The translations under genes and the position numbers were made by a program. Shown here one piece after another: positions 1 through 14,578 of a stretch of 64,000 bases of DNA. Within the stretch, counting starts at the first letter, position 1; every line of letters starts with the position of its first letter. The stretch lies in the IMG/VR virus record IMGVR_UViG_3300046171_000252, positions 1 through 64,000 of that record; one strand, 5' to 3'. The notes beneath the pieces were generated by a model. That model saw only the letters and a list, made by a program, of their open reading frames with translations. It searched no databases and was not told the DNA's origin.

Positions 1-2
1 CT

Positions 3-635
3 CTGAAGTCTCGTCGTCAGATGGCAGAGGGTTATATGTACAAACTCATTGAGATGAAAGAAAAGGTCCGTGAGTTTGACTTTAAGTGGGCAGATAAGGA
101 TAAAGCACAACCAATTTTTTGGGAAGAAGGTGGACCCGGTGGTGGTTCCAAGAAACTGTGTTGGTTTGATTTAGATGAACTTACACTGTCTCATTATCTG
201 AAGTCTTCTGAACTTGAGATTCGTGATCGTCTTCACCAGATGCAACATCTAGATAAGATTCTTGATAAATTGATGGAAAAGAATGATGGCAAACCAGTCA
301 CCCGAGAACAATTCCTTGATGCTGATGGGCAGTATTGGGAAAGAAGATTTGCCGATCAGGCTATGGATGAAATGATCGCGGCACAAACTGGCATCTCTAT
401 TGGTAACCTACACAGTATGCGTCGTGCTTCTGCACCTGCAATTGTTGATAAGAGAAATGAACTGCCAGAAGGTTATATGCCTCTGAATAAGATTCTTGAA
501 AGTCCTCAAGGTAAGATGGACTTCCTGAATGATCTGCAGAAGAAAGTTCTCACAGGTATCCAAGAAGTTACTGGTGAAAATCTTGGTATGATTGCCGGTT
601 CTCCAGAAGAGGAGCAAAAGAAACTCCAAGGTTGA
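3..635 (+). CDS. Hypothetical protein, probably 5'-truncated by the window edge; upstream-most gene of the Kelch/modification locus in this window
   Basis: Frame is open from position 3 (LKSRRQ) into ATG 21 and stops at TGA 633-635; next gene starts at 637. Confidence 0.75.
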   Translation: MKSRRQMAEGYMYKLIEMKEKVREFDFKWADKDKAQPIFWEEGGPGGGSKKLCWFDLDELTLSHYLKSSELEIRDRLHQMQHLDKILDKLMEKNDGKPVTREQFLDADGQYWERRFADQAMDEMIAAQTGISIGNLHSMRRASAPAIVDKRNELPEGYMPLNKILESPQGKMDFLNDLQKKVLTGIQEVTGENLGMIAGSPEEEQKKLQG

Positions 636-636
636 T

Positions 637-1170
637 ATGAACCAGAAGATTATTGTTGCCGATGACTTTTATGATATCGCACATCCATATCATAAAGGCA
701 TCGTAGAAGGTGAACCAATTTTTACTGATGAAGCACCCCAGAAAATTTCACATCTTCTGGGTCGTGAGATAAAAGTAGAGAACTTATTTAATGAAGTTGC
801 TCCATCCAAGACTCCAAATCCAATCACTGCTAATCTTGCCTGTGATTGGATTGCGGTTATCTATCTGACGATGCCTGGTGATTGTGTATCACAAAGAGGC
901 ATGAGTTTTTATAGTCATTTAAGTACAGGATTTGATGCATTCCCTGATGAGTATGCCCGTCAGTTACATGGAATACAGACACAAGAAGACATTATGGCAA
1001 CATTTAATATTGATAATAGAGAAGAGTGGAAAGAATATTCTAATGTATATGTAAAATATAATCGTATTGTATTATTCGGTGCTGATTTATGGCATTCATA
1101 TGGTAAAGGTTTTGGTGAGCAACTAAATAACTCAATGATATACCAGAAGCTGTTAATACAAAATGCCTAG
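637..1170 (+). CDS. DUF6445-like 2OG-Fe(II) oxygenase-fold protein, HxD motif degenerate
   Basis: Paralog of 5899-6516 (IIVxDDFY, WxAVIY, KYNRxVLF, LWHS); ATG 637 follows the stop of ORF1; the HxD position reads TxN. Confidence 0.7.
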   Translation: MNQKIIVADDFYDIAHPYHKGIVEGEPIFTDEAPQKISHLLGREIKVENLFNEVAPSKTPNPITANLACDWIAVIYLTMPGDCVSQRGMSFYSHLSTGFDAFPDEYARQLHGIQTQEDIMATFNIDNREEWKEYSNVYVKYNRIVLFGADLWHSYGKGFGEQLNNSMIYQKLLIQNA

Positions 1171-4100
1171 AGGAATATTTAGATTAAAACAGGTATATGA
1201 AGAGCAGTTATCTGGTAACTGGTCTGAGAAAAAAGATGTCTGGAATACTCCGAGTCCTTTTAATGCCACACATCCTTTTGGTTACTTTGGTGGTGGTCGT
1301 GCTCCAAGTGTAGTATCAACAGTAGATCGTATTGATTATTCTAATGATACGGCAACGGCATCACTAAAAGGACCATTAAGTGCTGCTATAAGCATTACGG
1401 GAGCAACAGGTAATGCCAACTTCGGTTACCATGGTGGTGGTTATCCTGGTCCAGTAGTATCAACAGTAGATCGTATTGATTATACTAATGATACTGCAAC
1501 TGCATCAACAAAAGGACCATTAAGTGTTGCTAGATATGCTCCAGCAGCAACCGGCAATACTTCCTTTGGTTACTTTGGTGGTGGTTATGCTGGTGGTGGT
1601 GTGTCAACAGTAGACCGTGTAGATTATTCTAATGATACTGGAACAGCACCAGCAAAAGGTCCATTAAGTGTTATCAGACACTATCATGGAGCAACAGGTA
1701 ATGCAGACTTTGGTTACTTTGGTGGTGGTTCTGGACCAAAATCATCAGTAGACCGTATTGATTACTCTAATGACACTGCAACAGCATCACCAAAAGGGCC
1801 ATTAAGTCTTGCTAGAGGTGGTCCAGCAGCAACAGGAAATTCATCCTTTGGATACTTTGGTGGTGGTTATCCTGGTCCAAGATCAACAGTAGATCGTATT
1901 GATTATTCTAATGACACTGCCACAGCAGTAGCAAAAGGACCATTAAGTAGTGCTAGATATTCACAGGGAGCAACGGGTAGTGCTTCCTTTGGTTATTTTG
2001 GTGGTGGCGAACCTGGTCCAGCAGTATCAAATGTAGACCGCATTGATTACTCTAATGATACGGCAACAGCATCACCAAAAGGACCATTGAATGTTGCTAG
2101 ATTTATGGCTGCAGCAACAAGTTCTCAGGCTAATGGAATCACGGATGAAACATTATTCCCGGCACCAACAGTAAGAGAAAATGTAGCACCACAAGGAACT
2201 GACTTTGGTTACTTTGGTGGTGGTAGAACTCCTGGTACTGTATCGACAGTAAACCGTATTGATTACTCTAATGATACGGCAACGGCATCAACAAAAGGAC
2301 CATTAAGTAGTGCTAGATATGGTTTAGCAGCAACAGGTAATGCTCCATTTGGATACTTTGCTGCTGGTAATCCTTCAAGTGCAGTATCAACAGTAGATCG
2401 TATTGATTACTCTAATGACACCGCAACGGCATCAGTCAAAGGACCATTAAGTGCTGTTAGTCCTGGTAGTGCTGCTAGTTTAGGCAATTCTAATTTTGGT
2501 TATTTTGCTGCTCCTTCTGCTACATCAACAGTAGAACGTATAGATTATTCTGATGACACTGCCACGGCATTAGTCAGAGGACCATTAAGTGTTTCCAAAT
2601 ATTCTAGAGCAGGAACAGGTAATGCTAATTTTGGATATGTTGGCGGTGGTGGTCCTGCAACATCGATAGTAGACCGTATTGATTACTCTAACGATACTGC
2701 TACAGCATCACCAAAAGGTCCATTAAGTCTTGCTAGAATATCTTTGGCAGCAACAGGTAATGCTTCATTCGGATACTTTGGTGGTGCTTTCCCCGGTCCA
2801 CATTCAACAGTAGACCGTATTGATTATTCTAATGACACCGCAACGGCATCACCTAAAGGACCATTGAGTTCTGCTAGAGGTCAATTTGCAGCAACAGGTA
2901 ATGCTGACTTTGGTTACTTTGGTGCAGGTTATGATGATAATCCTAATCGTGTGTCAACTGTGGACCGTGTTGATTACTCCAATGATACAGCAACGGCAGT
3001 GGCAAAAGGACCATTAAGTCAGGTTGTGATGAATCATGGAGCATGTAGTTCCAGAGCAAATGCAATCCCACTCAAAGGAACTGGTAACTTAGAAGTTCCA
3101 GTCTTAATGGGTGCTTTTAATGTCATAACACCACAAGGAACTGATTTTGGATACTTTGGTGGTGGACTTGCTCCCAGTTCTAGCTCATCAGTAGACCGTA
3201 TTGATTACTCTAATGACACTGCAACGGCAGCAGAAAAAGGACCATTCAGTGTTACTAGATATGGTGCGGCAGCAACAGGAAACCAATCATTCGGTTACTT
3301 TGCTGGTGGTCATGGTCCATTATCATCAGTAGACCGTATTAATTACTCTAACGATACCGCAACGGCATTAGAAAGAGGACCATTAACTGCTGGTAAACGA
3401 TACTATGGAGCAACTGGTAATTCATCTTTTGGTTACTTTGGTGGTGGGTCTGGTTCTGGTGGTGTTATATCATCAGTAGACCGTATTGATTACTCTAATG
3501 ACACTGCGACAGCAGTAGCAAAAGGACCATTAAGTGCTGCTAAGTATGTCACAGGAGCAACAGGTAATGCCAACTTTGGATATATTGGTGGTGGATTTGA
3601 TAATCCTAATCTCTATTCAACAGTAGAACGCATTGATTACTCTAATGACACCGCAACAGCATCACCAAAAGGACCATTAAGTGTTGCTAGACGGAGACTA
3701 GCAGCAACAGGTAATGCAGACTTTGGTTACTTTGGTGGTGGTAATGATCCCGAGCAGTCAACAGTAGATCGTGTTGATTATTCTAACGATACCGCAACAG
3801 CACCAGCAAAAGGACCATTAAGTCTTGCTAGAGCATACTTAGCAGCAACCGGTAATGCTTCTTTTGGTTACTTTGGTGGTGGTGAATCAGCACCTGGTCC
3901 AGGTGCAAGATCAACAGTAGATCGTGTTGATTATTCTAGTGATACTGCAACAGCAGCAGCAAAAGGACCATTAAGTGTTACTAGAAGATATTTTAGAGCA
4001 ACAAGTTCCAGAGACAATGCAATCCCAACTCAAAATATTGTAAATTATGCGATAGGAACTCTAGCAACTCCTAACACCGGTTACTTTGCTGGAGGTATGG

Positions 4101-5869
4101 CTGGTCCAGTATCAACAGTAGATCGTATTGATTATTCTAATGACACTGCAACAGCAACAGTAAAAGGATCATTAAGTGTTACTAGACGTGGAGTGGCAGG
4201 GACAGGTAATGCTTCCTTTGGTTATTTTGGTTGTTCTTATCCTGCTATATCAACAGTAGATCGTATTGATTATTTGAATGATACTACAACAGCATCACCT
4301 AAAGGACCGTTAACTGTTGCTAGAGCTTCTGGGGGAGCAACAGGTAATGCTAACTTTGGTTATTTTGGTGGTGGCAGTCCTAGTCCTGCAACAGTAGACC
4401 GTATTGATTACTCTAATGATACTGCAACAGCAGTAGCAAAAGGACCATTAAGTGTTGGTAGAAGATTATTAGGAGCAACAGGCAATAGTTCTTTTGGTTA
4501 CTTTGGTGGTGGTGTTCCTAATACAACAATAGTAGATCGTATTGATTATTCTAATGATACGGCAACGGCATCACCAAAAGGAACATTAACTGCTGTTAAA
4601 AGAAGAATAGCAGCAACAGGTAATGCTGACTTTGGATACTTTGGTGGTGGTGGTCCTAGTGCAGTATCAACAGTAGATCGTATTGATTATTCTAATGATA
4701 CTGCGACAGCATCACCAAAAGGACCATTAAGTGCTGCTAAACAATACACGGCAGCAACAGGAAACTCTAACTTTGGTTACTTTGGTGGTGGTGATCCTGG
4801 TCCAATGTCAACAGTAGACCGTATTGATTACTCTAATGATACTGCAACAGCATCAGTCAAAGGACCATTGAGTGCTGCTAGAAAATACTTTGCAGCATCA
4901 AGTGCCAGAGCCAATGGATTTACTGTAGTCGGTCCAGCACTGGTTTCTAATGCTGCTGCAATGGCAGTGCCTAATGCAAGATCATTTGGTTACTTTGGTG
5001 GTGGTCTTCCCAGTCAACCTACATCAAAAGTAGAACGTATTGATTATTCTAATGATACTGCAACAGCATCAGTCAAAGGACCATTAACTGATGTTGGGTA
5101 TGGTTTAGCAGCAACAGGTAATAGTTTCTTCGGTTACTTTGCTGGTGGTCAAGCTCCTTCTCCTGGTCCAACATCAAAAGTAGACCGTCTTGATTATTCT
5201 AATGACACTGCAACAGCAGTAGCAAAAGGACCATTAAGTGCAGTTGTATATAAAAATCGTGCAACTGGTAATAGTTCTTTTGGATATAATGGTGGTGGCA
5301 GAAACCCTTCTTCTGTACTATCAACAGTAGACCGTATTGATTATTCTAATGATACTGCAACAGCAGCAGTCAAAGGACCATTAAGTGTTGCTAGATATAG
5401 TCACGCAGCAACAGGTAATAGTTCTTTTGGATATTTTGCTGCTGGTCGTACTCCTACTACAAAATCAACAGTAGATCGTATTGATTACTCTAATGATACT
5501 GGAACAACACCATCAAAAGGACCATTAAGTGTTGCTAGATTTAATTTAGCAGCAACCGGCAATGCTGACTTTGGATACTTTGGTGGTGGCAGTAATCCCG
5601 AGTATTCAACAGTAGACCGCATTGATTATTCTAATGACACGGCAACGGCAGCAGTCAAAGGACCATTGAGTGCCGCTAAAACTTACTTTTCAGCAACAGG
5701 CAATGCTTCCTTTGGATACTTTGGTGGTGGTACTCCTGGTTCAGTATCAACAGTACAACGTATTGATTACTCTAATGATACTGCAACGGCATCAGTAAGA
5801 GGACCATTAAGTTCTGTTACACAAAGACAAGCAGGAGTGTCAGCAGCAGCAAATGGACTTCCACAATAG
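1163..5869 (+). CDS. Giant Kelch-like repeat protein, 1568 aa, 30 blades in five predicted 6-bladed beta-propellers
   Basis: 30 copies of the ~45-aa unit GYFGGG..STVDRIDYSNDTATA.KGPL..AR...AATGN (Kelch pattern GG...R), in groups of six separated by four unique linkers. Confidence 0.85.
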   Translation: MPRGIFRLKQVYEEQLSGNWSEKKDVWNTPSPFNATHPFGYFGGGRAPSVVSTVDRIDYSNDTATASLKGPLSAAISITGATGNANFGYHGGGYPGPVVSTVDRIDYTNDTATASTKGPLSVARYAPAATGNTSFGYFGGGYAGGGVSTVDRVDYSNDTGTAPAKGPLSVIRHYHGATGNADFGYFGGGSGPKSSVDRIDYSNDTATASPKGPLSLARGGPAATGNSSFGYFGGGYPGPRSTVDRIDYSNDTATAVAKGPLSSARYSQGATGSASFGYFGGGEPGPAVSNVDRIDYSNDTATASPKGPLNVARFMAAATSSQANGITDETLFPAPTVRENVAPQGTDFGYFGGGRTPGTVSTVNRIDYSNDTATASTKGPLSSARYGLAATGNAPFGYFAAGNPSSAVSTVDRIDYSNDTATASVKGPLSAVSPGSAASLGNSNFGYFAAPSATSTVERIDYSDDTATALVRGPLSVSKYSRAGTGNANFGYVGGGGPATSIVDRIDYSNDTATASPKGPLSLARISLAATGNASFGYFGGAFPGPHSTVDRIDYSNDTATASPKGPLSSARGQFAATGNADFGYFGAGYDDNPNRVSTVDRVDYSNDTATAVAKGPLSQVVMNHGACSSRANAIPLKGTGNLEVPVLMGAFNVITPQGTDFGYFGGGLAPSSSSSVDRIDYSNDTATAAEKGPFSVTRYGAAATGNQSFGYFAGGHGPLSSVDRINYSNDTATALERGPLTAGKRYYGATGNSSFGYFGGGSGSGGVISSVDRIDYSNDTATAVAKGPLSAAKYVTGATGNANFGYIGGGFDNPNLYSTVERIDYSNDTATASPKGPLSVARRRLAATGNADFGYFGGGNDPEQSTVDRVDYSNDTATAPAKGPLSLARAYLAATGNASFGYFGGGESAPGPGARSTVDRVDYSSDTATAAAKGPLSVTRRYFRATSSRDNAIPTQNIVNYAIGTLATPNTGYFAGGMAGPVSTVDRIDYSNDTATATVKGSLSVTRRGVAGTGNASFGYFGCSYPAISTVDRIDYLNDTTTASPKGPLTVARASGGATGNANFGYFGGGSPSPATVDRIDYSNDTATAVAKGPLSVGRRLLGATGNSSFGYFGGGVPNTTIVDRIDYSNDTATASPKGTLTAVKRRIAATGNADFGYFGGGGPSAVSTVDRIDYSNDTATASPKGPLSAAKQYTAATGNSNFGYFGGGDPGPMSTVDRIDYSNDTATASVKGPLSAARKYFAASSARANGFTVVGPALVSNAAAMAVPNARSFGYFGGGLPSQPTSKVERIDYSNDTATASVKGPLTDVGYGLAATGNSFFGYFAGGQAPSPGPTSKVDRLDYSNDTATAVAKGPLSAVVYKNRATGNSSFGYNGGGRNPSSVLSTVDRIDYSNDTATAAVKGPLSVARYSHAATGNSSFGYFAAGRTPTTKSTVDRIDYSNDTGTTPSKGPLSVARFNLAATGNADFGYFGGGSNPEYSTVDRIDYSNDTATAAVKGPLSAAKTYFSATGNASFGYFGGGTPGSVSTVQRIDYSNDTATASVRGPLSSVTQRQAGVSAAANGLPQ

Positions 5870-5902
5870 TATGCTATAATAAACAAAAGATTGATTATAT
5901 GA
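5840..5902 (+). repeat. 63-bp exact direct repeat, copy 1 (Kelch 3' end, stop, TGnTATAAT, ATG of next gene)
   Basis: Identical to 12029-12091 by direct comparison. Confidence 0.9.
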
Positions 5903-6516
5903 GACAAAATATTATTGTTGTTGATGACTTTTATGATAATCCAGAAGAGGTCAGGAACTTTTCACTGAACGCAGAGTTTCCTGATCCTGGTGATGACTAT
6001 ACATATCCTGGAAAAAACTCAGAAGGTTCATATTATTCTGAAGAAATTCATAAAAAATTTGAGGATCTTGCCAAAGAACCACTCATTCCTGCAGATAAGA
6101 ATGGATACTTTCGTCTTTCATTAGAAAAAGATAAGTATAGACAAGACGTTCATGTAGATCCATCATGGGAATGGGGTGCCGTAATTTATATGTCCGACCC
6201 AAAGGATTGTGTTGATGAGGGTGGCACATCATTTTGGAGACATAATACTCTGAAGTATGAGAACATTCCCAAGACAGATTTTGAAGCACAGCATCACGGA
6301 TGGCCAACATACAAAGAGTGTTGGTGGACGATGGTCTATGGTGATGGACTAGATAGAGATAAATGGACACGATACTTTCTGTGTCCGATGAAGTATAATC
6401 GTTTAGTATTATTCAGAACTCATCTGTGGCACTCGCATAATTATAATTTTGGTGATACACTAGAGAATGGTCGTATGGTCCAGTTGTTCTTTTTTAATCC
6501 GGTGAAGGAGTGGTGA
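5899..6516 (+). CDS. DUF6445-like 2OG-Fe(II) oxygenase
   Basis: HVD iron-binding motif, GGTSFW, YNRLVLF..HLWHS distal His. Confidence 0.75.
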   Translation: MRQNIIVVDDFYDNPEEVRNFSLNAEFPDPGDDYTYPGKNSEGSYYSEEIHKKFEDLAKEPLIPADKNGYFRLSLEKDKYRQDVHVDPSWEWGAVIYMSDPKDCVDEGGTSFWRHNTLKYENIPKTDFEAQHHGWPTYKECWWTMVYGDGLDRDKWTRYFLCPMKYNRLVLFRTHLWHSHNYNFGDTLENGRMVQLFFFNPVKEW

Positions 6517-7349
6517 ATGAAAACATATCATTTTATGGCAGGTCTTCCACGATCCGGAAGCACCTTATTGAAGAGTTTGATTGATCAGAATCCAAATATT
6601 CATACTGAACCTGTGAGTTCTGTAATGGAATTGATGTATCATACGGAAGAATACTTTAAGCAATCAGAACAGTATCAGGGATATCAAAAACCACAGAATG
6701 CTCATAAGATTATCAGTAGTTTTATAGAGAATCAATATTATGAAAGAGAAGAAGAGATAATCATTGACCACTGCCGTGCCTGGCCAAATAATATAGAACG
6801 ATTAAAGACTTACATTACACCTAATCCAAAAATCATATGCCCTGTTCGTAATATCACAGAAGTATTGACTTCATTTATTACAATGATACATCGCAACTCC
6901 GATGAATTTAATTTTATTGATAAGGCACTGATTGATGGTGGGTTCAGTGTGGATGATGATAATCGTTGTCAGTATTTGATGGGTGATGAGGGTATTGTAG
7001 AGCAGGCACTATGGGCACAGTCTCAGGCATTCATCGGCACGATGATAAGTATTTGTTGATGGTTGAGTATGATGATCTAGTCAATACTCCAGAAGAAACG
7101 ATGAGAAGAATTTATAATTTCTTGGAGGTTGATTACTATCATCATGATTTTAATAATGTGCAGAATAATCATAGAGAAAGTGAAGACCAGTGGAACCTAA
7201 AGGATATGCATTATGTCCGTGATAAGGTCAAGAAAATATCAAAGAAACCCGAAGATGTTTTATCTCCTTTTATTCTAAATAGGTATAAGAAACTGGAATA
7301 CTGGAAGTATCCGGACAGCCCTTATTTGGTAAAAAATGGCAGTAACTAA
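6517..7349 (+). CDS. PAPS-dependent sulfotransferase, split by a -1 frameshift near 7035 (ORFs 6517-7059 and 7011-7349)
   Basis: N-terminal GLPRSGSTLL 5'-PSB loop, CPVRNITEVLTS 3'-PB motif, C-terminal VEYDDLV..PEETMRRIYNFL; the span of 833 nt is one base short of a whole-codon length. Confidence 0.85.
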
Positions 7350-10300
7350 TAGAAGAGGAATATTTTCATTACTTGATGTAAGAGAAAGACAGGGTGCCGG
7401 AGTTTGGTCCACGAAAGAAGATGTCTGGAATACTCCGAGTCCTTTTTTGGTGCCACAAGGATTTGCTACTGGATATTTTGCTGGCGGGGCATATACAATT
7501 TCAACAGTAGATCGTATTGATTACTCTAATGACACTGCAACGGCATCGGTAAAAGGACCATTAAGTGTTGGTAGAAATTCTCTAGGAGCAACAGGTAATA
7601 AGGACTTTGGTTACGTTGGTGGTGGTGCGAGTCCTTCTGTAGTATCAACAGTAGACCGCATTGATTATTCTAGTGATACTGGAACAACACCAGCAAAAGG
7701 ACCACTTAGTGATGTTAGAAGACGTCAAGCAGCAACAGGTAATGCTTCCTTCGGTTACTTTGGTGGTGGTACTCCATCATCACAGGTTAGATTAACAACA
7801 GTAGACCGCATTGATTACTCTAATGATACTGCAACGGCATCACCAAAAGGACCATTAAGTTCTGCTAGATCATACCATGCGGCAACAGGTAATTCTTCCT
7901 TTGGATACTTTGCTGGTGGTTCCACTCCAAGTAAAGTAACAACAGTAGACCGTATTGATTATTCTAATGACACGGCAACAGCATCAGTCAAAGGACCATT
8001 AAGTCTTGCTAGAGATACTTCGGGAGCAACAGGTAATGCTGATTTTGGTTACTTTGGTGCTGGTTATGGATCTAGCATATTTTCAACAGTAGATCGTATT
8101 GATTATTCTAATGATACTGCGACAGCAGCAGCAAAAGGACCATTGAGTGCTGTTAAAGCAGCTTTAGGAGCAACTGGTAATAGTTCCTTTGGATACTTTG
8201 GTGGTGGTTATCCTGGTCCTGCATATTCAACAGTAGACCGTATTGATTACTCTAATGACACCGCAACGGCAGTCAGTCAAAGGACCATTAAGTCTTGCTA
8301 GATCATTCATGAAAGCATTAAGTTCCAGAGCTAATGCAATTCCCGCAAAATTATTACAACCGGCACCAACAGTAAGAACGGGTGAGATAGCACCACAAGG
8401 AACTGACTTTGGTTACTTTGGTGGAGGTTATGATGGTTCTACTACCGTATCAACAGTAGACCGTATTGATTATTCTAATGACACTGCAACGACAGTGGCA
8501 AAAGGACCATTAAGTGTTGCTAAAAATGGTATGGGAGCAACAGGTAATGCTCCCTTTGGATATTTTGGTGGTGGTAGTCCTGGACCATTATCATCAGTAG
8601 ACCGTATTGATTACTCTAATGACACTCCAACGGCATCAGCAAAAGGACCATTGAGTGTTGCTAGATATTATTTGGCAGCAACAGGTAATAGTGATTTTGG
8701 TTATTTTGCTGGTGGTGATACGATTATTTCAACAGTAGATCGTGTTGATTATAATAATGACACTGCAACAGCAGCAGTAAAAGGACCATTGAGTACTGCT
8801 AGAGATGAATTAGCAGCAACAGGTAATACTTCTTTCGGTTACTTTGGTGGAGGTGCAACACCTACTGTAGTATCATCAATAGATCGCATTAATTATGCTA
8901 ATGATACTGCTACTGCATCACCAAAAGGACTATTGAGTCAAGGTAGAAAAGATTTAGCAGCAACAGGTAATGCTTCTTTTGGATACTTTGGTGGTGGAGC
9001 TTCTCCTAGTAATGTATCAACAGTAGATCGTATTGATTACTCTAATGATACTGCTACGGCATCACCTAAAGGATCATTGAGTACTGCTAAGTTTTTTCTA
9101 AGTGCAACAGGTGATCAGAACTTTGGTTATTTTGGTGGTGGTCTTAATCCTGCTCTAAGTCCGGCTAGAAAAACAACAGTAGATCGTATTGATTACTCTA
9201 ATGATACTGTAACAGCATCACCTAAAGGTTCATTAAACACTGAAAAAACTGCTTTAGGAGCATCAAGTTCCAGAGCCAATGCAATACCACTCAAAGGACC
9301 TGGTAACTTAGAAGTTCCAGTCTTAATGGGTGCTTTTAGTCGTAATTTGGGACCACAAGGAACTGATTTTGGTTATGTTGGTGGTGGTTATCCCGCAAAA
9401 TCAACAATAGAACGTATTGATTACTCTAGCGATACTTCAACTGCATCAGTAAGAGGACCATTAAGTCTTGCTAGATATTCTTTAGGAGCAACAGGTAATA
9501 GTTCTTTTGGTTACTTTGGTGGTGGATATACTTCTAGTAATGTATCAACAGTAGACCGTATTGATTATTCTAATGACTCTGCAGATGCAGTAGCAAAAGG
9601 ACCATTGACTAGTGCTAAAAGATATATGGGAACAACAGGTACTCAAAGTTTTGGTTACTTTGGTGGTGGTTATGATAATTCTACTCCTGTATTATCAACA
9701 GTAGATCGTATTGATTATAATAATGATACCAATACGGCATCACCAAAAGGACCATTAAGTGTCGCCAGATATGAATTAGCAGCAACAGGTAATCAATCAT
9801 TCGGTTACTTTGCTGGTGGTGGTCCTGGTCCAAAATCAACAGTAGATCGTATTGATTATTCTAATGATACGGCAACGGCAGCAGTCAAAGGACCATTAAG
9901 TGCTGCTAGATGGGTTGTAAGTGCAACGGGAAATGCTTCATTCGGTTACTATGGGGGTGGGGGACAACCTGGTACAAGTTCGAAAGTAGATCGTATTGAT
10001 TACTCTAATGATACTGCAACTTCAATAGAGAAGGGTCCATTAAGTATTGCTAGGGAGAGTATGTCGGCAACAGGTAATCAATCATTTGGTTACTTTGCTG
10101 GAGGATATACTCCGACAATATCAACGATAGATCGTATTGATTATTCTAATGACACTGCCACGGCATCAGTAAGAGGTCCATTAACTGAGGTTAAGGGATA
10201 CACAGCAGCAACAAGTTCCAGAGCCAATGGAATTCCGACTGAAAATATTGTAAATTATGCGGCAGGAACTCTAGGGACTCCTAACACCGGTTACTTTGGT

Positions 10301-12058
10301 GGTGGTGCTTCTCTGAGTAGTATAGATCGTATTGATTATTCCAATGACACTGCAGCGGCAACAGTAAAAGGACCGATGAGTGTTGCTAGATATGGAGGAG
10401 CAGCAATAGGTAATGATTCGTTCGGTTACTTTGGTGGTGGTTCTCCTGGTCCAACATCATCAGTAGATCGTATTGATTACTTAAATGATACTGTAGATGC
10501 ATCACCCAAAGGACCATTGAGTGGCGCATTCCCTTATATCGCAGCAACAGGTAATCAATCGTTTGGATACGTTGGTGGTGGTTATCCTGCAAAATCAACA
10601 GTAGACCGCATTGATTATTCTAATGACACCGTAGCAGCACCAGCAAAAGGACCATTAAGTGTTGCTAGATTTGGTTTAGGAGCAACAGGTAATGCTTCCT
10701 TTGGTTATTTTGGTGGTGGTGGTCCTGGTGAAAAATCAACAGTAGACCGTATTGATTATTCTAATGACACCGCAACAGCATCAGCAAAAGGACCATTGAG
10801 TGCTGGTAGAAGATATTTTTCGGCAACTGGTAATGCTTCCTTTGGTTACTTTGGTGGTGGTGCAGGTGGTCAGACAATAGTAGACCGCATTGATTATTCT
10901 AATGACACCGCAACAGCAGTAGAAAAAATACAATTCAGTGGTGCCAGACAAGAACGAGGAGCAACGGGTAACTCTTCCTTCGGATATTTTGGTGGTGGTC
11001 ATCCTGGTCCAGCAGTATCAATAGTAGATCGTATTGATTATTCTAATGACACTGCAACGTTATCACCTAGAGGACCATTAAGTGTTGCTAGAAGATATTC
11101 TGCAGCAGCAAGTGCCAGAGCCAACGGATTCGTTCCAATCGGTCCAGCAGTGGTTTCTAATGCTGCTGCAATCGCAGGGTCATTTAATCCAACAACCTTT
11201 GGTTACTTTGGTGGTGGTAATACTGGATCTAATGCATCAACAGTAGATCGTATTGATTACTCTAATGATACTGCAACGGCATCAGTCAAAGGACCATTAA
11301 GTCTTGCTAGAAGATACCTAGCAGCAACAGGCAATAGTTTCTTCGGTTACTTTGGTGGTGGTGATCCTGCATTATCAACAGTAGACCGTATTGATTATTC
11401 TAATGACACTGCTACAGCAGCAGCAAAAGGACCATTGAGTAATGGTAGACATTCTTTGGCAGCAACGGGCAATGCTAACTTTGGTTACTTTGGTGGTGGT
11501 TGGGCTCCCAATTCGAGCTCATCAGTAGATCGTATTGATTATTCTAATGACACTCCAACAGCATCAGCAAAAGGACCATTAAGTGCTGCTAGAGATGGTT
11601 TAATAGCAACAGGAAACTTATCATTTGGTTACTTTGGTGGTGGTAGTCCTGGAGTATCAACAGTAGATCGTATTGATTATTCTAATGATACTGCAACGGC
11701 ATCACCAAAAGGACCATTAAGTTTTGGCAGAGATCAATTGGGAGCAACAGGTAATGCAGACTTTGGATATTTTGGTGCTGGTCATCCTGCAAAATCAACA
11801 GTAGATCGTATTGATTATTCTAATGATACTGCAACGGCATCAGTCAAAGGACCATTAAGTGTTGGTAGGCATGCTTTGGCAGCAACAGGTAATTCATCTT
11901 TTGGTTACTTTGGTGGTGGTACTCCTGGTCCAAAATCAACAGTAGATCGTATTGATTACTCAAATGATACTGCTACGGCAGCAGCAAAAGGACCATTAAG
12001 TGTTGCTAGATATGGTTTGGGAGCAACTTCAGCAGCAGCAAATGGACTTCCACAATAG
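7336..12058 (+). CDS. Second giant Kelch-like repeat protein (~1573 aa, 30 blades), split by a +1 frameshift near 8272 (ORFs 7336-8301 and 8243-12058)
   Basis: Same N-terminus (RGIF.L..V.E.Q..G.WS.K.DVWNTPSPF), 5x6 blades, same four linkers and same AAANGLPQ end as 1163-5869; acggcagtcagtcaaagga has one extra base versus the repeat consensus. Confidence 0.85.
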
Positions 12059-12091
12059 TATGCTATAATAAACAAAAGATTGATTATATGA
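12029..12091 (+). repeat. 63-bp exact direct repeat, copy 2
   Basis: Identical to 5840-5902. Confidence 0.9.
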
Positions 12092-12750
12092 TTGATAATC
12101 CACTGACACATATTTTGATCCGACCCAATGTAATTTCTCCTGAAGGTATTCGGGAGATGGTGGATCATATTAAACAATCACCTTGTGAAGACCTATCTGT
12201 ATTTGATTCGGAGACGACAAATAGAACAGGTGAGACATCATGGCAGGTTGATAAGAAGACAAGAGACACACAAATTGTTCCTATGGGAGATTTGTATCCC
12301 AAGATTACGGAACTTCTTCATCATGCCGTAAAAGAAGTTATCAATCCTTTCTATGGTATTGATGTAACCAGTAGTGAAGTCCCACAGGTTCTATCCTATG
12401 GTATTGGTGGACACTACAAACCTCATATTGATGGTGAGAGTATCTGGGTCACACCAAGAGGTGAAAAGATTTGGAAAAAATCTACGGACAGAGATATCTC
12501 TATGGTCTTTTATCTCAATGATGATTTTGAGGGTGGAGATTTTATTTTTCCAGAACATCACATTCGTGTAAGACCTGAACCTGGTATGATGGTTTGCTTC
12601 CCTTCCAGTCATTATTATATGCACGGAGTAGAACCAGTGACAAGAGGGAAAAGATATAGTATAGTGTGTTGGGCTACGGTAAAAGGTCAACCAAGTATGG
12701 ACGAAATTAATAATCAGTTATCTCAAGAGTATGGAGTCAAAGTAATTTAA
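12088..12750 (+). CDS. 2OG-Fe(II) oxygenase, prolyl 4-hydroxylase (P4Hc)-like
   Basis: YKPHID (HxD), FYLNDDFEGG, FPS..MHGVEPVTRGKRYS. Confidence 0.85.
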   Translation: MIDNPLTHILIRPNVISPEGIREMVDHIKQSPCEDLSVFDSETTNRTGETSWQVDKKTRDTQIVPMGDLYPKITELLHHAVKEVINPFYGIDVTSSEVPQVLSYGIGGHYKPHIDGESIWVTPRGEKIWKKSTDRDISMVFYLNDDFEGGDFIFPEHHIRVRPEPGMMVCFPSSHYYMHGVEPVTRGKRYSIVCWATVKGQPSMDEINNQLSQEYGVKVI

Positions 12751-12753
12751 ATT

Positions 12754-14163
12754 ATGGCAAACATTTTGGGATTGCAGTTCGGACATGATGGATCCGTTTG
12801 CCTTGTTAAGAATGGTAAGTTAGAGTTTGCCATTGGAACAGAAAGAATTACTGGTGTTAAAAAGCAACAAGGATTTACAGACGAGGTTATAAATTATGCT
12901 TTGGACTCTTGTGGTTTAACAGTTGATGATATTGATTGTGTTGCCACCAATGATTTTAAGCAAGAATTTTTTGGTAATGAATATCTTGTAGATAATTTTA
13001 TTATTCAGGGTAGAGAGATTAAGTGTTATATTATTTCTCACCATCTAGCACACTGTGCCTCTGCATATTATACTAGTCCATTTAATGAAGCACATTGTTT
13101 CAGTATGGATTGTAGTATGGGAAAGATAGAAGCAAACTCTGTGGTGGCATATGGTAAAGGGAAGAAACTTTTTGCCGAATATTGTCCCGGAGAAATGGTC
13201 GGAGTATTATATGGTGAAGTAACAGAGAAGTTAGGACTCGGACCTGCACTTCATAAGGCAGGAACAACAATGGGTCTCTCATCATATGGGACACCATTTG
13301 ATTTTGATTATCAATCTTATACTGATGACATCAAACATAAGATGGATGTGGCAGCATCCGTTCAGAATTTGTTTGAGAATAAAGTATTGAGTGTCTTGAA
13401 TGATATAGATCAGAACTCTGATAATCTTTGTCTCTCCGGAGGATCATTTTTAAATTGTAATGCTAACTCAGAGGTCGTAAGAAAATCTAAATTTAAACAG
13501 TTTCATCACTTTCCGGCATGTGGTGATGATGGAACGGCAGTTGGTTCTGCACTTTATGTTGCTCATCATATTCTTGGAGAGGCAAGGTATGATTATGAAC
13601 CACAAGACATCTGTTATACCGGAAGAGATTATCCAAGTCAGACACCGGACTATAATCACATAGCAAGACAAATTGCCGATGGTAAAATAATTGGTTGGTT
13701 TCAGGGCAAATCAGAGTTTGGTCCAAGAGCACTAGGTAATCGTTCTATTCTTGCAGACCCAAGAAACTTTCATAATCGTGAACTCATCAATCATGTCGTG
13801 AAGAATAGAGAATGGTTCCGTCCTTTTGCTCCTGTTGTATTAGAAGAGTGCTATCAAGATTGGTTTGACTTTCCTATCCCCAGTCCCTACATGCTTTATA
13901 CCGCACAGGTGAAGCAACCAGAAAAAGTTCCAGCCATAACTCATGTTGATGGGTCTGCCAGATTTCAGACAGTCACAGAGAAATCTAATAAGCACTACTA
14001 TAATATTATTAAAGCATTTGGAGAACTAACTGGTGTGCCTGTTCTACTGAATACAAGTTTAAATGGAAACGGACAACCCATATTAGAAACCGAAGAGGAC
14101 GCACAAGAGTTTTACAAAAATTCTAAACTTGATATGATGATTATCAATGGTGCTATAATATAA
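12754..14163 (+). CDS. O-carbamoyltransferase, NodU/CmcH/TobZ family
   Basis: GHDGS, SHHLAHCASAY, LSGGSFLNC, EFGPRALGNRSILADP, FRPFAP, THVDGSARFQTV, LLNTSLN. Confidence 0.93.
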   Translation: MANILGLQFGHDGSVCLVKNGKLEFAIGTERITGVKKQQGFTDEVINYALDSCGLTVDDIDCVATNDFKQEFFGNEYLVDNFIIQGREIKCYIISHHLAHCASAYYTSPFNEAHCFSMDCSMGKIEANSVVAYGKGKKLFAEYCPGEMVGVLYGEVTEKLGLGPALHKAGTTMGLSSYGTPFDFDYQSYTDDIKHKMDVAASVQNLFENKVLSVLNDIDQNSDNLCLSGGSFLNCNANSEVVRKSKFKQFHHFPACGDDGTAVGSALYVAHHILGEARYDYEPQDICYTGRDYPSQTPDYNHIARQIADGKIIGWFQGKSEFGPRALGNRSILADPRNFHNRELINHVVKNREWFRPFAPVVLEECYQDWFDFPIPSPYMLYTAQVKQPEKVPAITHVDGSARFQTVTEKSNKHYYNIIKAFGELTGVPVLLNTSLNGNGQPILETEEDAQEFYKNSKLDMMIINGAII

Positions 14164-14166
14164 ATA
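14159..14166 (+). promoter_or_regulatory. T4-type late promoter TATAAATA
   Basis: Exact consensus 22 nt upstream of ATG 14189. Confidence 0.6.
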
Positions 14167-14188
14167 TTTGAAAGTTATCTCACAAAAA

Positions 14189-14578
14189 ATGGCAAAATAT
14201 CTAAAGCATTATTGGAAGAAAAATGGTTCTTGGTTAACCGATCCCGGTACATATGTAGAACAACATCACCCAGAAGCAGACTATCCTGGTCTTGGAGTAA
14301 AGGTCTGGATGCACGACTCTGATGGTGTTGATGTCTGCCTTTCTGAAGTTCCTGATAGCACTACGATTTCTACTATTAATGTAGGTTCTAAGAAAGCTGT
14401 TATGGAACTGACCGAAACGCAATTTAATTCTGTCAAAACTCCTCTTGATGAAGAATCAGTTCTTCGCCAAGCAGCAATGGAGGCAGAAATGAGTGGTGAT
14501 ACTGACACCGCAGCAACTAAGAATACTGCTGCAGCTGCCAAAGCAACCGAAGCACAGAATGCACTGAATGCACTCTGA
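14189..14578 (+). CDS. Hypothetical protein, last gene of the Kelch locus
   Basis: ORF track entry; ATG 14189 preferred over TTG 14168. Confidence 0.75.
   Translation: MAKYLKHYWKKNGSWLTDPGTYVEQHHPEADYPGLGVKVWMHDSDGVDVCLSEVPDSTTISTINVGSKKAVMELTETQFNSVKTPLDEESVLRQAAMEAEMSGDTDTAATKNTAAAAKATEAQNALNAL

What the first reader, a model, noticed from the sequence alone, without database searches (positions are those of the whole stretch)
5840..12091. 63-bp identical junction puts a different oxygenase behind each Kelch gene
Seen: 5840-5902 and 12029-12091 are identical. They cover the last Kelch codons, the stop, an extended -10 (TGCTATAAT) and the next ATG, then diverge at once into two unrelated-looking oxygenases (DUF6445-like versus P4Hc-like). 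Identity here is complete while blade loops have diverged. Inference: recent gene conversion or a recombination joint. Crossover between copies would excise about 6.2 kb (oxygenase, sulfotransferase, Kelch 2) or amplify it, pairing each Kelch with its own modifier.
Basis: partly seen in the sequence, partly recalled or inferred. Interest (0 to 1): 0.6.

Follow-up and report, generated by a model that had tools for sequence, protein, structure and literature searches.

The report
Repeated promoter cassette after phage propeller genes
A marine cyanophage carries three giant propeller-repeat genes, each ending in the same short promoter-like sequence that begins a different set of modifying-enzyme genes; copying between the three keeps it uniform, and the island gains and loses whole gene modules among relatives.

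Summary
5840-5902 and 12029-12091 are identical, and a third copy with one mismatch lies at 204963-205025 of the same 207.6-kb virus record, which adjoins the window start on a circular map. Each copy holds the last nine codons and stop of a ~1,570-aa gene, a 29-nt spacer with a perfect extended -10 (TGCTATAAT), and the next ATG. Each gene encodes five six-bladed Kelch-fold propellers.

The downstream genes differ: a small glycosyltransferase-like gene, a DUF6445 2OG/Fe(II)-oxygenase-fold gene, and a P4H-like oxygenase. The phage is a T4-like cyanomyovirus near Synechococcus phage S-SKS1.

In relatives from at least eight other metagenomes the cassette sits at the same three junctions. Junction spacers are alike within a genome and differ between genomes (0.80 against 0.59 identity; 0 of 5,000 permutations), the signature of gene conversion.

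Module content varies widely. Some relatives carry a T4 late-promoter motif at the same place.

Best reading: a promoter cassette without a stem-loop that behaves like a PeSL, a new variant of a known kind. Promoter activity and crossover at the 63-mer itself are not shown. The window's two frameshifts are probably record errors.

The parts
3..635 (+). 3' part of a 584-aa glycosyltransferase gene (GT-B type) that begins near the end of the record
   Evidence: Record 206803-207616 equals window 1-814 at 99.3%. The full gene is at record 205683-207437. Pfam Glycos_transf_1 E 3.8e-18; PHROG glycosyltransferase.
637..1170 (+). DUF6445a, a paralogue of the DUF6445 oxygenase-fold gene that lacks the HxD metal-binding motif. 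Its stop overlaps the start of propeller gene 1 by 8 nt.
   Evidence: Pfam DUF6445 E 4.6e-5. 30% identical to DUF6445b. Alignment shows T-A-N in place of H-V-D.
1163..5869 (+). Propeller gene 1 (1,568 aa): 30 repeats of 47-48 aa arranged as five units of six blades, separated by SS(R/Q)AN-type linkers
   Evidence: Translation. Blade and linker count. Repeat families. Sister gene matches PHROG 19111, function unknown. Kelch fold of a sister unit.
5840..5902 (+). Junction cassette copy 1: last 9 codons, stop, 29-nt spacer, ATG and one more base
   Evidence: Exact identity to 12029-12091. One mismatch to record 204963-205025.
5872..5880 (+). Extended -10 motif TGCTATAAT. The TATAAT ends 18 nt before the ATG, and there is no -35 match.
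   Evidence: all 10 such motifs in the window lie on the + strand, upstream of start codons. TATAA is invariant and T nearly invariant across 15 diverged spacers. The two-hexamer scan does not call it.
5899..6516 (+). DUF6445b, a 2OG/Fe(II)-oxygenase-fold protein with HVD...WHSH
   Evidence: Pfam DUF6445 E 4.5e-12. AF2 model pLDDT 87.7. Best PDB matches are HygX, PtlH and OGFOD1. Motifs.
6517..7349 (+). Sulfotransferase gene, split in the window by a 1-nt deletion near 7033 that is probably a record error. It overlaps the start of propeller gene 2 by 14 nt.
   Evidence: Pfam Sulfotransfer_3 on both pieces. Intact at 277 aa in relatives. All four public runs carry one extra base at 7032-7034.
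7336..12058 (+). Propeller gene 2 (30 blades), split in the window by a 1-nt insertion at 8272 that is probably a record error
   Evidence: Translations. Blade count 6+24. Indel found against contig 3300046411_000564. Contigs of all four runs lack one base at 8272-8274.
10207..10307 (+). 101-nt exact repeat with the third propeller gene (record 203039), covering the linker between units 3 and 4
   Evidence: It shows that long identical tracts, and so probably conversion, are not confined to the junction.
12029..12091 (+). Junction cassette copy 2
12061..12069 (+). Extended -10 motif TGCTATAAT of copy 2
12088..12750 (+). P4H-like 2OG-Fe(II) oxygenase
   Evidence: Pfam 2OG-FeII_Oxy_3 E 1.4e-18. 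PHROG 61 2OG-Fe(II) oxygenase. 57 orthologous loci.
12754..14163 (+). Nol-like carbamoyltransferase
   Evidence: Pfam Carbam_trans_C E 1e-65. PHROG 1601. tblastn hits in cyano- and pelagimyophages.
14151..14166 (+). TGCTATAAT overlapping a T4 late-promoter consensus TATAAATA, just upstream of a 136-aa gene (14168-14578)

Best explanation
The 63-bp block is the 3' boundary cassette of a triplicated gene module in a hypervariable island beside the tail-fibre genes of a T4-like cyanomyovirus. It has two parts.

(1) The conserved C-terminal tail (SAAAN-G/A-LPQ, then stop) of each of three giant proteins. Each protein is built from five six-bladed Kelch-fold propellers.

(2) A 29-nt spacer with a perfect extended -10 promoter motif and no -35. 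Its TATAAT ends 18 nt before the next ATG, which would put a transcript start in the conserved CAAAA.

Inferred function: host-type RNA polymerase restarts transcription after each long propeller gene. The transcript would cover the enzyme genes that follow (glycosyltransferases and DUF6445a; DUF6445b and sulfotransferase; P4H-like oxygenase and carbamoyltransferase). Because start and stop codons overlap, it would also cover the next propeller gene.

The three copies stay identical through short-tract gene conversion during the recombination-rich T4-type replication cycle. Selection on the promoter and on the tail peptide adds to this.

As a by-product the cassette marks the 3' edge of the exchangeable propeller segment and supplies perfect homology at module boundaries. 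This works like PeSL regulatory cassettes of other T4-type phages and contributes to the gain, loss and swapping of modules seen among relatives.

Shown: the repeat and its third copy; the fold and family assignments; the motif class; within-genome homogeneity against between-genome divergence; variable module content.

Inferred: promoter activity, the conversion mechanism, and any crossover at the cassette itself.
For: The repeat and its copies:
- Three copies, one with a single mismatch.
- The cassette stands at the same three junctions in 12 stretches of 8 contigs from other metagenomes. In L020/L026 it stands behind a propeller gene with an unrelated C-terminus, so the spacer is a unit of its own.

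Promoter reading:
- Genome-wide there are 21 TGNTATAAT on the coding strand against 8 on the other, most of them 12-80 nt before an ATG and many with TTGACA-like -35 boxes. T4 late consensus TATAAATA occurs 17 against 1, at 15-54 nt before an ATG for most.
- In the window all 10 TGNTATAAT are on the + strand. Ten found against 5.1 expected; 2 of 100 shuffles reach 10.
- Across 15 diverged spacers upstream of the P4H orthologue, TATAA is invariant, the following T and the T of TG nearly so, and AAA of CAAAA invariant, while the flanks vary.
- Other relatives have (C)TATAAATA or CAATAAATA at the same place. The motif also ends 18 nt before the ATG and lies 2-3 nt before CAAAA.
- A promoter-like spacer is present whenever a propeller gene precedes P4H. 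It is absent when an enzyme gene precedes it; those genes overlap or abut.

Conversion:
- Spacer identity is 0.80 within genomes, 0.59 for the same junction between genomes, and 0.60 for other junctions between genomes. None of 5,000 label permutations reached the observed value.
- L043 carries the same private 8-nt duplication in both junctions. L062, L071 and L055 each have their own shared spacer type.
- The 300 nt upstream of the tail are only 65-84% identical in every comparison, paralogous or orthologous, so identity jumps to 100% only in the cassette.

Boundary role:
- Against a close relative, enzyme genes are 93-100% identical and the propeller 3' parts 58-81%. Identity recovers at 5929 and 12059, at the cassettes.
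- L044's junction spacer combines the 5' part of one spacer type with the 3' part of another.
- At least six architectures occur upstream of P4H.

Precedent: PeSL cassettes, with crossovers mapped between the -10 and the ATG and mini-circles detected (PMC2839356; PMC4122927).
Against: - No transcript start was mapped. All runs on offer were contigs, which cannot show RNA ends.
- The spacer has no -35 and was not called by the two-hexamer scan.
- There is no stem-loop or terminator in or before the cassette (fold z -0.47), so a defining PeSL part is missing.
- The cassette occurs only behind propeller genes, not around small ORFans as PeSLs do.
- Module loss can be explained without the cassette. 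The gene bodies carry hundreds of exact repeats of 25-101 nt. Some deletions end at other gene boundaries: p584 to P4H in L044-46, DUF6445a to P4H in L048.
- The permutation test treats junctions as independent although some genomes are close kin.
- In contig 3300025869_000050 one of the three junctions carries a different, late-type spacer, so homogenisation is not universal.
Confidence: 0.6

Rival explanations
1. Purifying selection alone. The three copies are identical because every base matters, as promoter, leader and C-terminal peptide. No gene conversion is involved, and the cassette has no role in recombination.
For: The -10 and the CAAAA are conserved across diverged relatives. The tail peptide SAAANGLPQ is kept in distant relatives with synonymous changes. 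The block spans about -47 to +16 relative to the presumed start, roughly an RNA polymerase footprint (reasoned).
Against: Flanking spacer positions do vary between genomes, for example AAAAGATTGATTAT against AAAACACTGAATAT, yet they are the same within a genome. All synonymous sites of nine codons are identical between genes 1 and 2, while the adjacent 300 nt are 78% identical. The 8-nt duplication shared by both junctions of L043 is very unlikely to have arisen twice.
Confidence: 0.12
2. Remnant of a recent segmental duplication. The 6.2-kb module was duplicated recently and the 63-mer simply has not yet diverged.
For: Direct repeats 6,189 bp apart with homologous genes upstream. N-terminal segments are also alike: 1220-1261 against 7405-7446 at 90%.
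Against: Sequence next to the 63-mer is 20-30% diverged. The same three modules, each with its own downstream genes, occur in relatives whose P4H is only 63-76% identical, so the triplication is old. The genes downstream of the three copies are unrelated to one another.
Confidence: 0.03
3. Assembly artefact. The identity was produced by collapse or consensus-building over a repeat in a metagenome assembly.
For: The record does contain probable errors: two single-base frameshifts not seen in four public runs, and an imperfect 814-bp terminal overlap.
Against: Eight other contigs from different metagenomes carry the cassette in the same contexts, four of them at two junctions each. Logan contigs of four runs from four studies break at the repeat edge, as expected for a real repeat. 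A 63-bp repeat is shorter than a read and is easily spanned.
Confidence: 0.02
4. The spacer is a post-transcriptional signal rather than a promoter: an A-rich, Shine-Dalgarno-less translation initiation region or an RNA processing site. It would re-couple expression of the downstream enzymes to a long late transcript that starts at the TATAAATA at record 192098.
For: No Shine-Dalgarno sequence precedes the ATG, and the leader CAAAA...ATTATATG is conserved in both spacer types. The only exact late consensus upstream of the island is at record 192098 and the next is at 14159, so read-through transcription of the whole island is plausible.
Against: The most conserved element is exactly TATAAT with an upstream TG. 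In relatives it is replaced by the other known promoter consensus of T4-type phages at the same distance. No RNA structure is predicted and no Rfam family matches.
Confidence: 0.15

Closest known systems
PeSL (promoter-early stem-loop) mobile regulatory cassettes of T4-type phages (Arbiol et al. 2010, PMC2839356; Comeau et al. 2014, PMC4122927)
   Same: A short, near-identical intergenic cassette with a sigma70-type promoter, repeated in a variable region of a T4-like genome. It sits at the borders of segments that are inserted, deleted or replaced between close relatives. In PeSLs the crossovers were mapped between the -10 and the ATG, and one relative here (L044) has a spacer that looks chimeric in that same interval.
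   Different: It has no stem-loop or terminator and no -35 box. The identity extends into the last nine codons of the upstream gene. It flanks 4.7-kb propeller genes and enzyme operons rather than small ORFans, and occurs only three times, always behind one gene family. Mini-circles have not been tested. The host group differs: PeSLs were judged unlikely in cyanophage S-PM2 (PMC4503421). The same genome does hold five cassettes at 45.3-53.9 kb that are closer to PeSLs in form, although their hairpin lies between the GTCACAC box and the -10.
Concerted evolution by gene conversion of the ends of tail-fibre and adhesin gene modules in T4-superfamily phages (modular shuffling; PMC3157838 appeared but was not read)
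   Same: Hypervariable, repeat-rich genes beside tail-fibre genes, with conserved segments that serve as recombination anchors. The identity profile between close strains is mosaic.
   Different: Here the anchor is a non-coding promoter spacer plus a nine-codon tail shared by three paralogues in one genome. It is not a conserved coding motif shared between phages.
Kelch-repeat six-bladed beta-propellers (Keap1, KLHL12, designed SAKe proteins)
   Same: Repeat of 47-48 aa with a glycine doublet or triplet. The predicted unit has 24 strands in six blades and matches Kelch domains at TM 0.70-0.83 with about 20% identity.
   Different: It does not reach any Pfam Kelch threshold (Kelch_3: 12.9 bits against a cut-off of 22). 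Five propellers stand in tandem in one 1,570-aa viral protein. Every blade carries DRIDYSNDTATA. Atlas neighbours are viral only. PHROG 19111 has no assigned function.

Membership tests
PeSL regulatory cassette | Strong sigma70-like early promoter (-35, 17-nt spacer, -10) | tested here: inconclusive
   Perfect extended -10 TGCTATAAT. No -35 at a 16-18 nt spacing: 2 of 6 matches at best by inspection, and not called by the scan. Activity was not measured.
PeSL regulatory cassette | Stem-loop acting as a terminator, joined to the promoter | tested here: not met
   Fold of 5820-5930: -17.4 kcal/mol, z -0.47, and 56 of 200 shuffles fold as well. No terminator-like site at either junction.
PeSL regulatory cassette | Several near-identical copies in intergenic spaces of a hyperplastic region | tested here: met
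   Three copies, differing by 0-1 base, in an island whose gene content differs among 57 related loci.
PeSL regulatory cassette | Copies border insertions, deletions or replacements between close relatives | tested here: met
   Identity to a close relative switches at the cassettes. Seven loci have DUF6445a-propeller-P4H without the middle module. In L026 the upstream gene is replaced right up to its stop codon.
PeSL regulatory cassette | Recombination between copies yields mini-circles or deletion joints | not testable with these tools
   Only Logan contigs were available and they break at the repeat. This needs inverse PCR or long reads from a lysate.
Extended -10 (TGn) sigma70 promoter | TGnTATAAT at the right distance from a transcript start | tested here: inconclusive
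   The motif is exact. Motifs of this class are strand-biased and lie just upstream of start codons, and the -10 is the most conserved part of the spacer. No transcript start data.
T4 late promoter (TATAAATA) | Consensus TATAAATA upstream of the gene | tested here: not met
   The window's cassette reads TATAATAA, two mismatches. Exact or NATAAATA motifs stand at the same junction in relatives L028-35, L047 and L049-57.
Gene conversion (concerted evolution) | Paralogues within a genome are more alike than orthologues between genomes | tested here: met
   Spacer identity 0.80 against 0.59; tail identity 0.79 against 0.63; 0 of 5,000 permutations reach the observed spacer value. Private duplication shared by both junctions in L043. 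Exception: junction 2 of contig 3300025869_000050.
Kelch repeat family (Pfam clan) | Significant match to a Kelch profile | tested here: not met
   No family at E<=0.01 for the whole proteins. Kelch_3 at E 0.13, 12.9 bits against a cut-off of 22, for one unit.
Kelch repeat family (Pfam clan) | Six-bladed beta-propeller of four-stranded blades, 44-56 aa each | tested here: met
   AF2 model of 11111-12055: pLDDT 65, pTM 0.68, about 24 strands. Top PDB matches are all Kelch domains at TM 0.70-0.83, E about 1e-13. Model confidence is moderate.
2OG-Fe(II) oxygenase superfamily | Family profile match or double-stranded beta-helix fold, with HxD...H metal ligands | tested here: met
   12088-12750: 2OG-FeII_Oxy_3 E 1.4e-18. 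5899-6516: DUF6445 E 4.5e-12, model pLDDT 87.7, matches HygX, PtlH and OGFOD1, HVD and WHSH conserved. 637-1170 lacks the HxD, so it may be inactive.

The most novel reading that the evidence does not exclude
The island is a self-contained system for making, decorating and diversifying three giant 30-blade propeller proteins of the virion or host-contact apparatus. Each swappable unit would be a promoter cassette, its own set of protein-modifying enzymes (oxygenase, sulfotransferase, glycosyltransferases, carbamoyltransferase) and a propeller gene. The enzymes would act on the invariant DRIDYSNDTATA...KGPLS motif present in every blade. Gene conversion would keep the cassettes uniform so that units can be exchanged. 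Swapping the cassette between host-sigma70 type and phage-late type would reset when a unit is expressed.
Probability: 0.15. Interest if true: 0.7.

Novelty: new variant of a known kind. Interest (0 to 1): 0.45.

Why it matters
Repeated regulatory cassettes that double as recombination anchors were described for coliphage- and vibriophage-type T4 relatives. They were considered unlikely in the one cyanophage examined (PMC4503421).

This case shows a stripped-down version, a promoter without a stem-loop fused to a gene tail. It marks module borders in an abundant marine cyanophage lineage, carries a clear signature of concerted evolution, and has natural variants with one to three modules.

It also gives testable boundaries for how cyanophages reshuffle a hypervariable set of giant propeller proteins beside the tail-fibre genes. 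Such proteins are candidates for host-range determinants. It shows too that the same gene can sit behind an early-type or a late-type promoter motif in close relatives.

The practical gain is modest: a defined 63-bp element and a 6,189-bp interval for inverse PCR, promoter reporters and 5'-end mapping.

Tried and rejected
- Megablast of 5000-13000 against the phage collection found nothing. The nearest isolate had to be found through proteins.
- RNA structure in the junction: none above shuffles. Rfam gave only a chance hit below threshold.
- Two-hexamer promoter and terminator scan: the junction is not called, and overall counts equal those of shuffles.
- Public runs held only Logan contigs. 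They break at the repeat and cannot show deletion joints, circles or RNA ends. The many joints listed lie between blades and are explained by repeats and related strains. One joint, 10686 to 5840, is simply the true end of gene 2 laid on a reference that did not include 12029 onward.
- I first read the two frameshifts (7033, 8272) as decay of the middle module. I rejected this because relatives and all four runs lack them.
- I looked for conversion beyond the 63-mer in the 300 nt upstream. There is no orthology or paralogy signal; all pairs are 65-84% identical.
- The single G/C difference of the third copy is not a useful derived character, because both states are widespread in relatives.
- S-SKS1 as an experimental handle: its island is reduced and lacks the cassette.
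- PDB sequence search with DUF6445b found nothing, so a fold search was needed.
- The large protein searches and the complex prediction were not used.

Full report
**What the window is.** The window is the first 64 kb of a 207,616-bp IMG/VR virus record. It encodes T4-type tail, baseplate and tail-fibre proteins, gp32, gp59, ThyX and PhoH. The nearest isolate is Synechococcus phage S-SKS1, genus Llyrvirus, with gp32 81% identical. Nearly all long ORFs lie on the + strand: 129 against 7. Record positions 206803-207616 repeat window 1-814 with six mismatches. The map is therefore circular or circularly permuted at about 206.8 kb, and the end of the record adjoins the window start.

**The observation.** Window 5840-5902 and 12029-12091 are identical, and neither side can be extended. 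The block contains:
- nine codons (SAAANGLPQ) and a TAG stop;
- a 29-nt spacer with TGCTATAAT;
- the ATG of the next gene and one more base.

Upstream, the two copies are 67-90% identical per 60 nt for about 240 nt. Downstream they are unrelated. A third copy with one mismatch lies at record 204963-205025. The 63-mer is the longest exact repeat between propeller genes 1 and 2 and the fourth longest in the genome. A 101-nt exact repeat links gene 2 with the third gene.

**The genes.** Across the record join, the island reads as follows:
1. tail-fibre/baseplate-like protein, 1,821 aa;
2. third propeller gene, 1,589 aa;
3. **cassette**;
4. 217-aa protein, weakly glycosyltransferase-like;
5. 584-aa glycosyltransferase;
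6. DUF6445a;
7. propeller gene 1, 1,568 aa;
8. **cassette**;
9. DUF6445b;
10. sulfotransferase;
11. propeller gene 2;
12. **cassette**;
13. P4H-like 2OG-Fe(II) oxygenase;
14. carbamoyltransferase;
15. 136-aa protein.

Each propeller protein has 30 repeats of 47-48 aa, arranged as five units of six. The units are separated by SS(R)AN-type linkers, and the C-terminal tail resembles the start of such a linker.

No Pfam family reaches threshold. A model of the C-terminal unit, built on an alignment of 21 units, has pLDDT 65 and pTM 0.68. It matches six-bladed Kelch domains best, at TM 0.70-0.83.

DUF6445b has the 2OG/Fe(II)-oxygenase fold and an HxD...H motif. DUF6445a lacks the HxD.

The enzyme genes overlap the start of the following propeller gene by 8 and 14 nt. 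A spacer separates each propeller gene from the following enzyme gene.

**Two apparent frameshifts.** The sulfotransferase gene (near 7033) and propeller gene 2 (8272) are each split in the window. Both are intact in relatives. Contigs of all four public runs examined show one base more at 7032-7034 and one base fewer at 8272-8274. I take both frameshifts to be errors or private variants of the record, not decay of the module.

**Is the spacer a promoter?** No transcript start could be mapped, so the evidence is indirect.
- TGNTATAAT occurs 21 times on the coding strand and 8 times on the other. Most coding-strand copies lie 12-80 nt before a start codon, and many have a TTGACA-like -35.
- In the window all 10 are on the + strand. 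Ten were found against 5.1 expected.
- The T4 late consensus TATAAATA occurs 17 times against 1, for most of them 15-54 nt before a start codon. The phage evidently uses both promoter classes.
- The junction motif has no -35 (inspection), which an extended -10 can tolerate (general knowledge).
- Across 15 diverged spacers upstream of the P4H orthologue, the invariant columns are TATAA, an A just after the hexamer, AAA of a CAAAA, and the TG of the ATG. The T of TG and the last T of TATAAT are nearly invariant, and the flanks vary.
- In other relatives the same place carries (C)TATAAATA or CAATAAATA overlapping the stop codon. That motif also ends 18 nt before the ATG and 2-3 nt before CAAAA.
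- A promoter-like spacer is present whenever a propeller gene precedes P4H. It is absent when an enzyme gene precedes it.
- There is no RNA structure, no terminator and no Rfam family.

**Is the identity kept by gene conversion?** The cassette occurs in eight other contigs from different metagenomes, always at these three junctions. In one of them it follows a propeller gene with an unrelated C-terminus.

I compared 22 junctions from nine genomes. Spacers are 0.80 identical within a genome, 0.59 at the same junction between genomes and 0.60 at other junctions between genomes. Tails are 0.79 against 0.63. None of 5,000 permutations of genome labels reached the observed within-genome spacer value.

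L043 has the same private 8-nt duplication (TATAATAGTATAATAA) in both of its junctions. L062, L071, L055 and L056 each have their own junction type. The three modules and their distinct downstream genes are shared by relatives whose P4H is only 63-76% identical, so the triplication is old. Within-genome identity therefore needs homogenisation.

The tract is short. The 300 nt before the tail are 65-84% identical in all comparisons.

There is one exception. Junction 2 of contig 3300025869_000050 has a late-type spacer and a tail like those of L050, which looks like an import from another lineage.

One caveat applies to the permutation test: some of the genomes are close kin.

**Does module number vary?** Yes. 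Upstream of P4H, the 57 loci show these architectures:
- DUF6445b-sulfotransferase-propeller, as in the window;
- p584-DUF6445a-propeller (seven loci), which is what a crossover between junctions 1 and 2, or anywhere between genes 1 and 2, would leave;
- GT217-p584 directly (three loci);
- DUF6445a directly (one locus);
- DUF6445b-sulfotransferase directly (three loci);
- three propeller genes in tandem (two loci).

Propeller genes range from 93 to 1,934 aa, that is, from one blade to about 30 counted.

Against a close relative, enzyme genes are 93-100% identical and the 3' parts of the propeller genes 58-81%. Identity recovers at the cassettes. The cassette is thus the 3' edge of the hypervariable segment.

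It does not single out the 63-mer as the crossover site, for two reasons. The gene bodies hold hundreds of exact repeats of 25-101 nt. Several deletions also end at other gene boundaries.

L044's spacer joins the 5' part of one spacer type to the 3' part of another. This hints at a crossover between the -10 and the ATG, as mapped for PeSLs (PMC2839356).

**Comparison with what is known.** PeSLs are sigma70-type promoter plus stem-loop cassettes of T4-type phages. Recombination between them deletes, inserts and circularises the genes in between (PMC2839356, PMC4122927). For cyanophage S-PM2 that mechanism was thought unlikely (PMC4503421).

The cassette here shares the promoter motif, the repetition, the position at the borders of variable segments and the phage group. 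It differs in five ways:
- it lacks the stem-loop and the -35;
- it includes a coding tail;
- it borders large genes;
- it is confined to one gene family;
- mini-circles are untested.

I therefore file it as working like a PeSL without being a member: a new variant of a known kind.

**Verdict.**
- Gene conversion: likely, about 0.75.
- Promoter activity: plausible, about 0.6.
- A special recombination role for the 63-mer itself: open, about 0.35.

Interest is moderate. It is a tidy, testable case in an abundant marine phage lineage, but not surprising to specialists in T4-type genomes.

**Limits.** No long reads, raw reads or transcript ends were available. The propeller model has moderate confidence. 

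Noticed in passing
window 1-814 and record G000:C1:206803-207616: The record ends with an 814-bp copy of its own start carrying 6 mismatches (99.3%). The genome map is therefore circular at about 206.8 kb, although IMG/VR lists the record as linear. The mismatches suggest two strain variants were merged at the ends.
   Followed up: yes
window 7033 and 8272: Two single-base frameshifts split the sulfotransferase gene and propeller gene 2. Relatives have intact genes, and contigs of four public runs show +1 base at 7032-7034 and -1 base at 8272-8274. They are probably errors of the record.
   Followed up: yes
window 45300, 46545, 49957, 50691, 53902 (+ strand): Five cassettes of the form GTCACAC, a GC-rich hairpin of variable sequence, (TG)CTATAAT, TTCATAC, GGGAAACCACCC, ATG. 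Two of them sit within an 84-nt exact repeat (50677 and 53888). They precede a UvsW-like helicase, small ORFans and a DUF7717 gene. In form they are closer to classical PeSLs than the junction cassette, but the hairpin lies between the GTCACAC box and the -10.
   Followed up: partly
window 10207-10307 and record 203039-203139: A 101-nt exact repeat between propeller gene 2 and the third propeller gene covers the linker between units 3 and 4. It is the longest exact repeat in the genome and suggests conversion inside the genes as well.
   Followed up: partly
window 14151-14166: TGCTATAAT overlaps an exact T4 late consensus TATAAATA just upstream of the 136-aa gene. This may be a dual early and late promoter.
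   Followed up: no
window 637-1170: DUF6445a and its orthologues in the near relatives have T-A-N where DUF6445b has the H-V-D metal-binding motif, while keeping the distal WHS. It may be a non-catalytic paralogue.
   Followed up: partly
window 1163-5869 and 7336-12058 (every blade): Each of the 30 blades carries the near-invariant DRIDYSNDTATA, which includes an N-x-T sequon, and KGPLS. Glycosyltransferase, sulfotransferase, carbamoyltransferase and prolyl-hydroxylase-like genes are interleaved with the propeller genes. Modification of the propellers is an obvious but untested idea.
   Followed up: no
L030 (contig 3300025869_000050) 6973-6995; L050 6979-7001; L055 4214-4235 and 6979-7001: In these relatives the junction before the P4H-like gene (and before DUF6445b in L055) carries a T4 late-promoter motif overlapping the stop codon instead of the extended -10. 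The promoter type at one junction has been exchanged between close lineages.
   Followed up: partly
record G000:C1:205022-205036 (third junction): At the third copy the cassette's ATG opens only a 4-codon mini-ORF (MIWV, then stop). The real start of the downstream 217-aa gene lies 5 nt further on in another frame. In contig 3300025869_000050 that cassette ATG reads ATA.
   Followed up: partly
L021 and L022 (Synechococcus phage S-SKS1, NC_020851): The nearest isolate has a reduced version of the island: propeller ORFs of 168-465 aa, partly unannotated, plus a sulfotransferase and fragmented 2OG oxygenase ORFs. It has no TGCTATAAT cassette at the junctions.
   Followed up: partly
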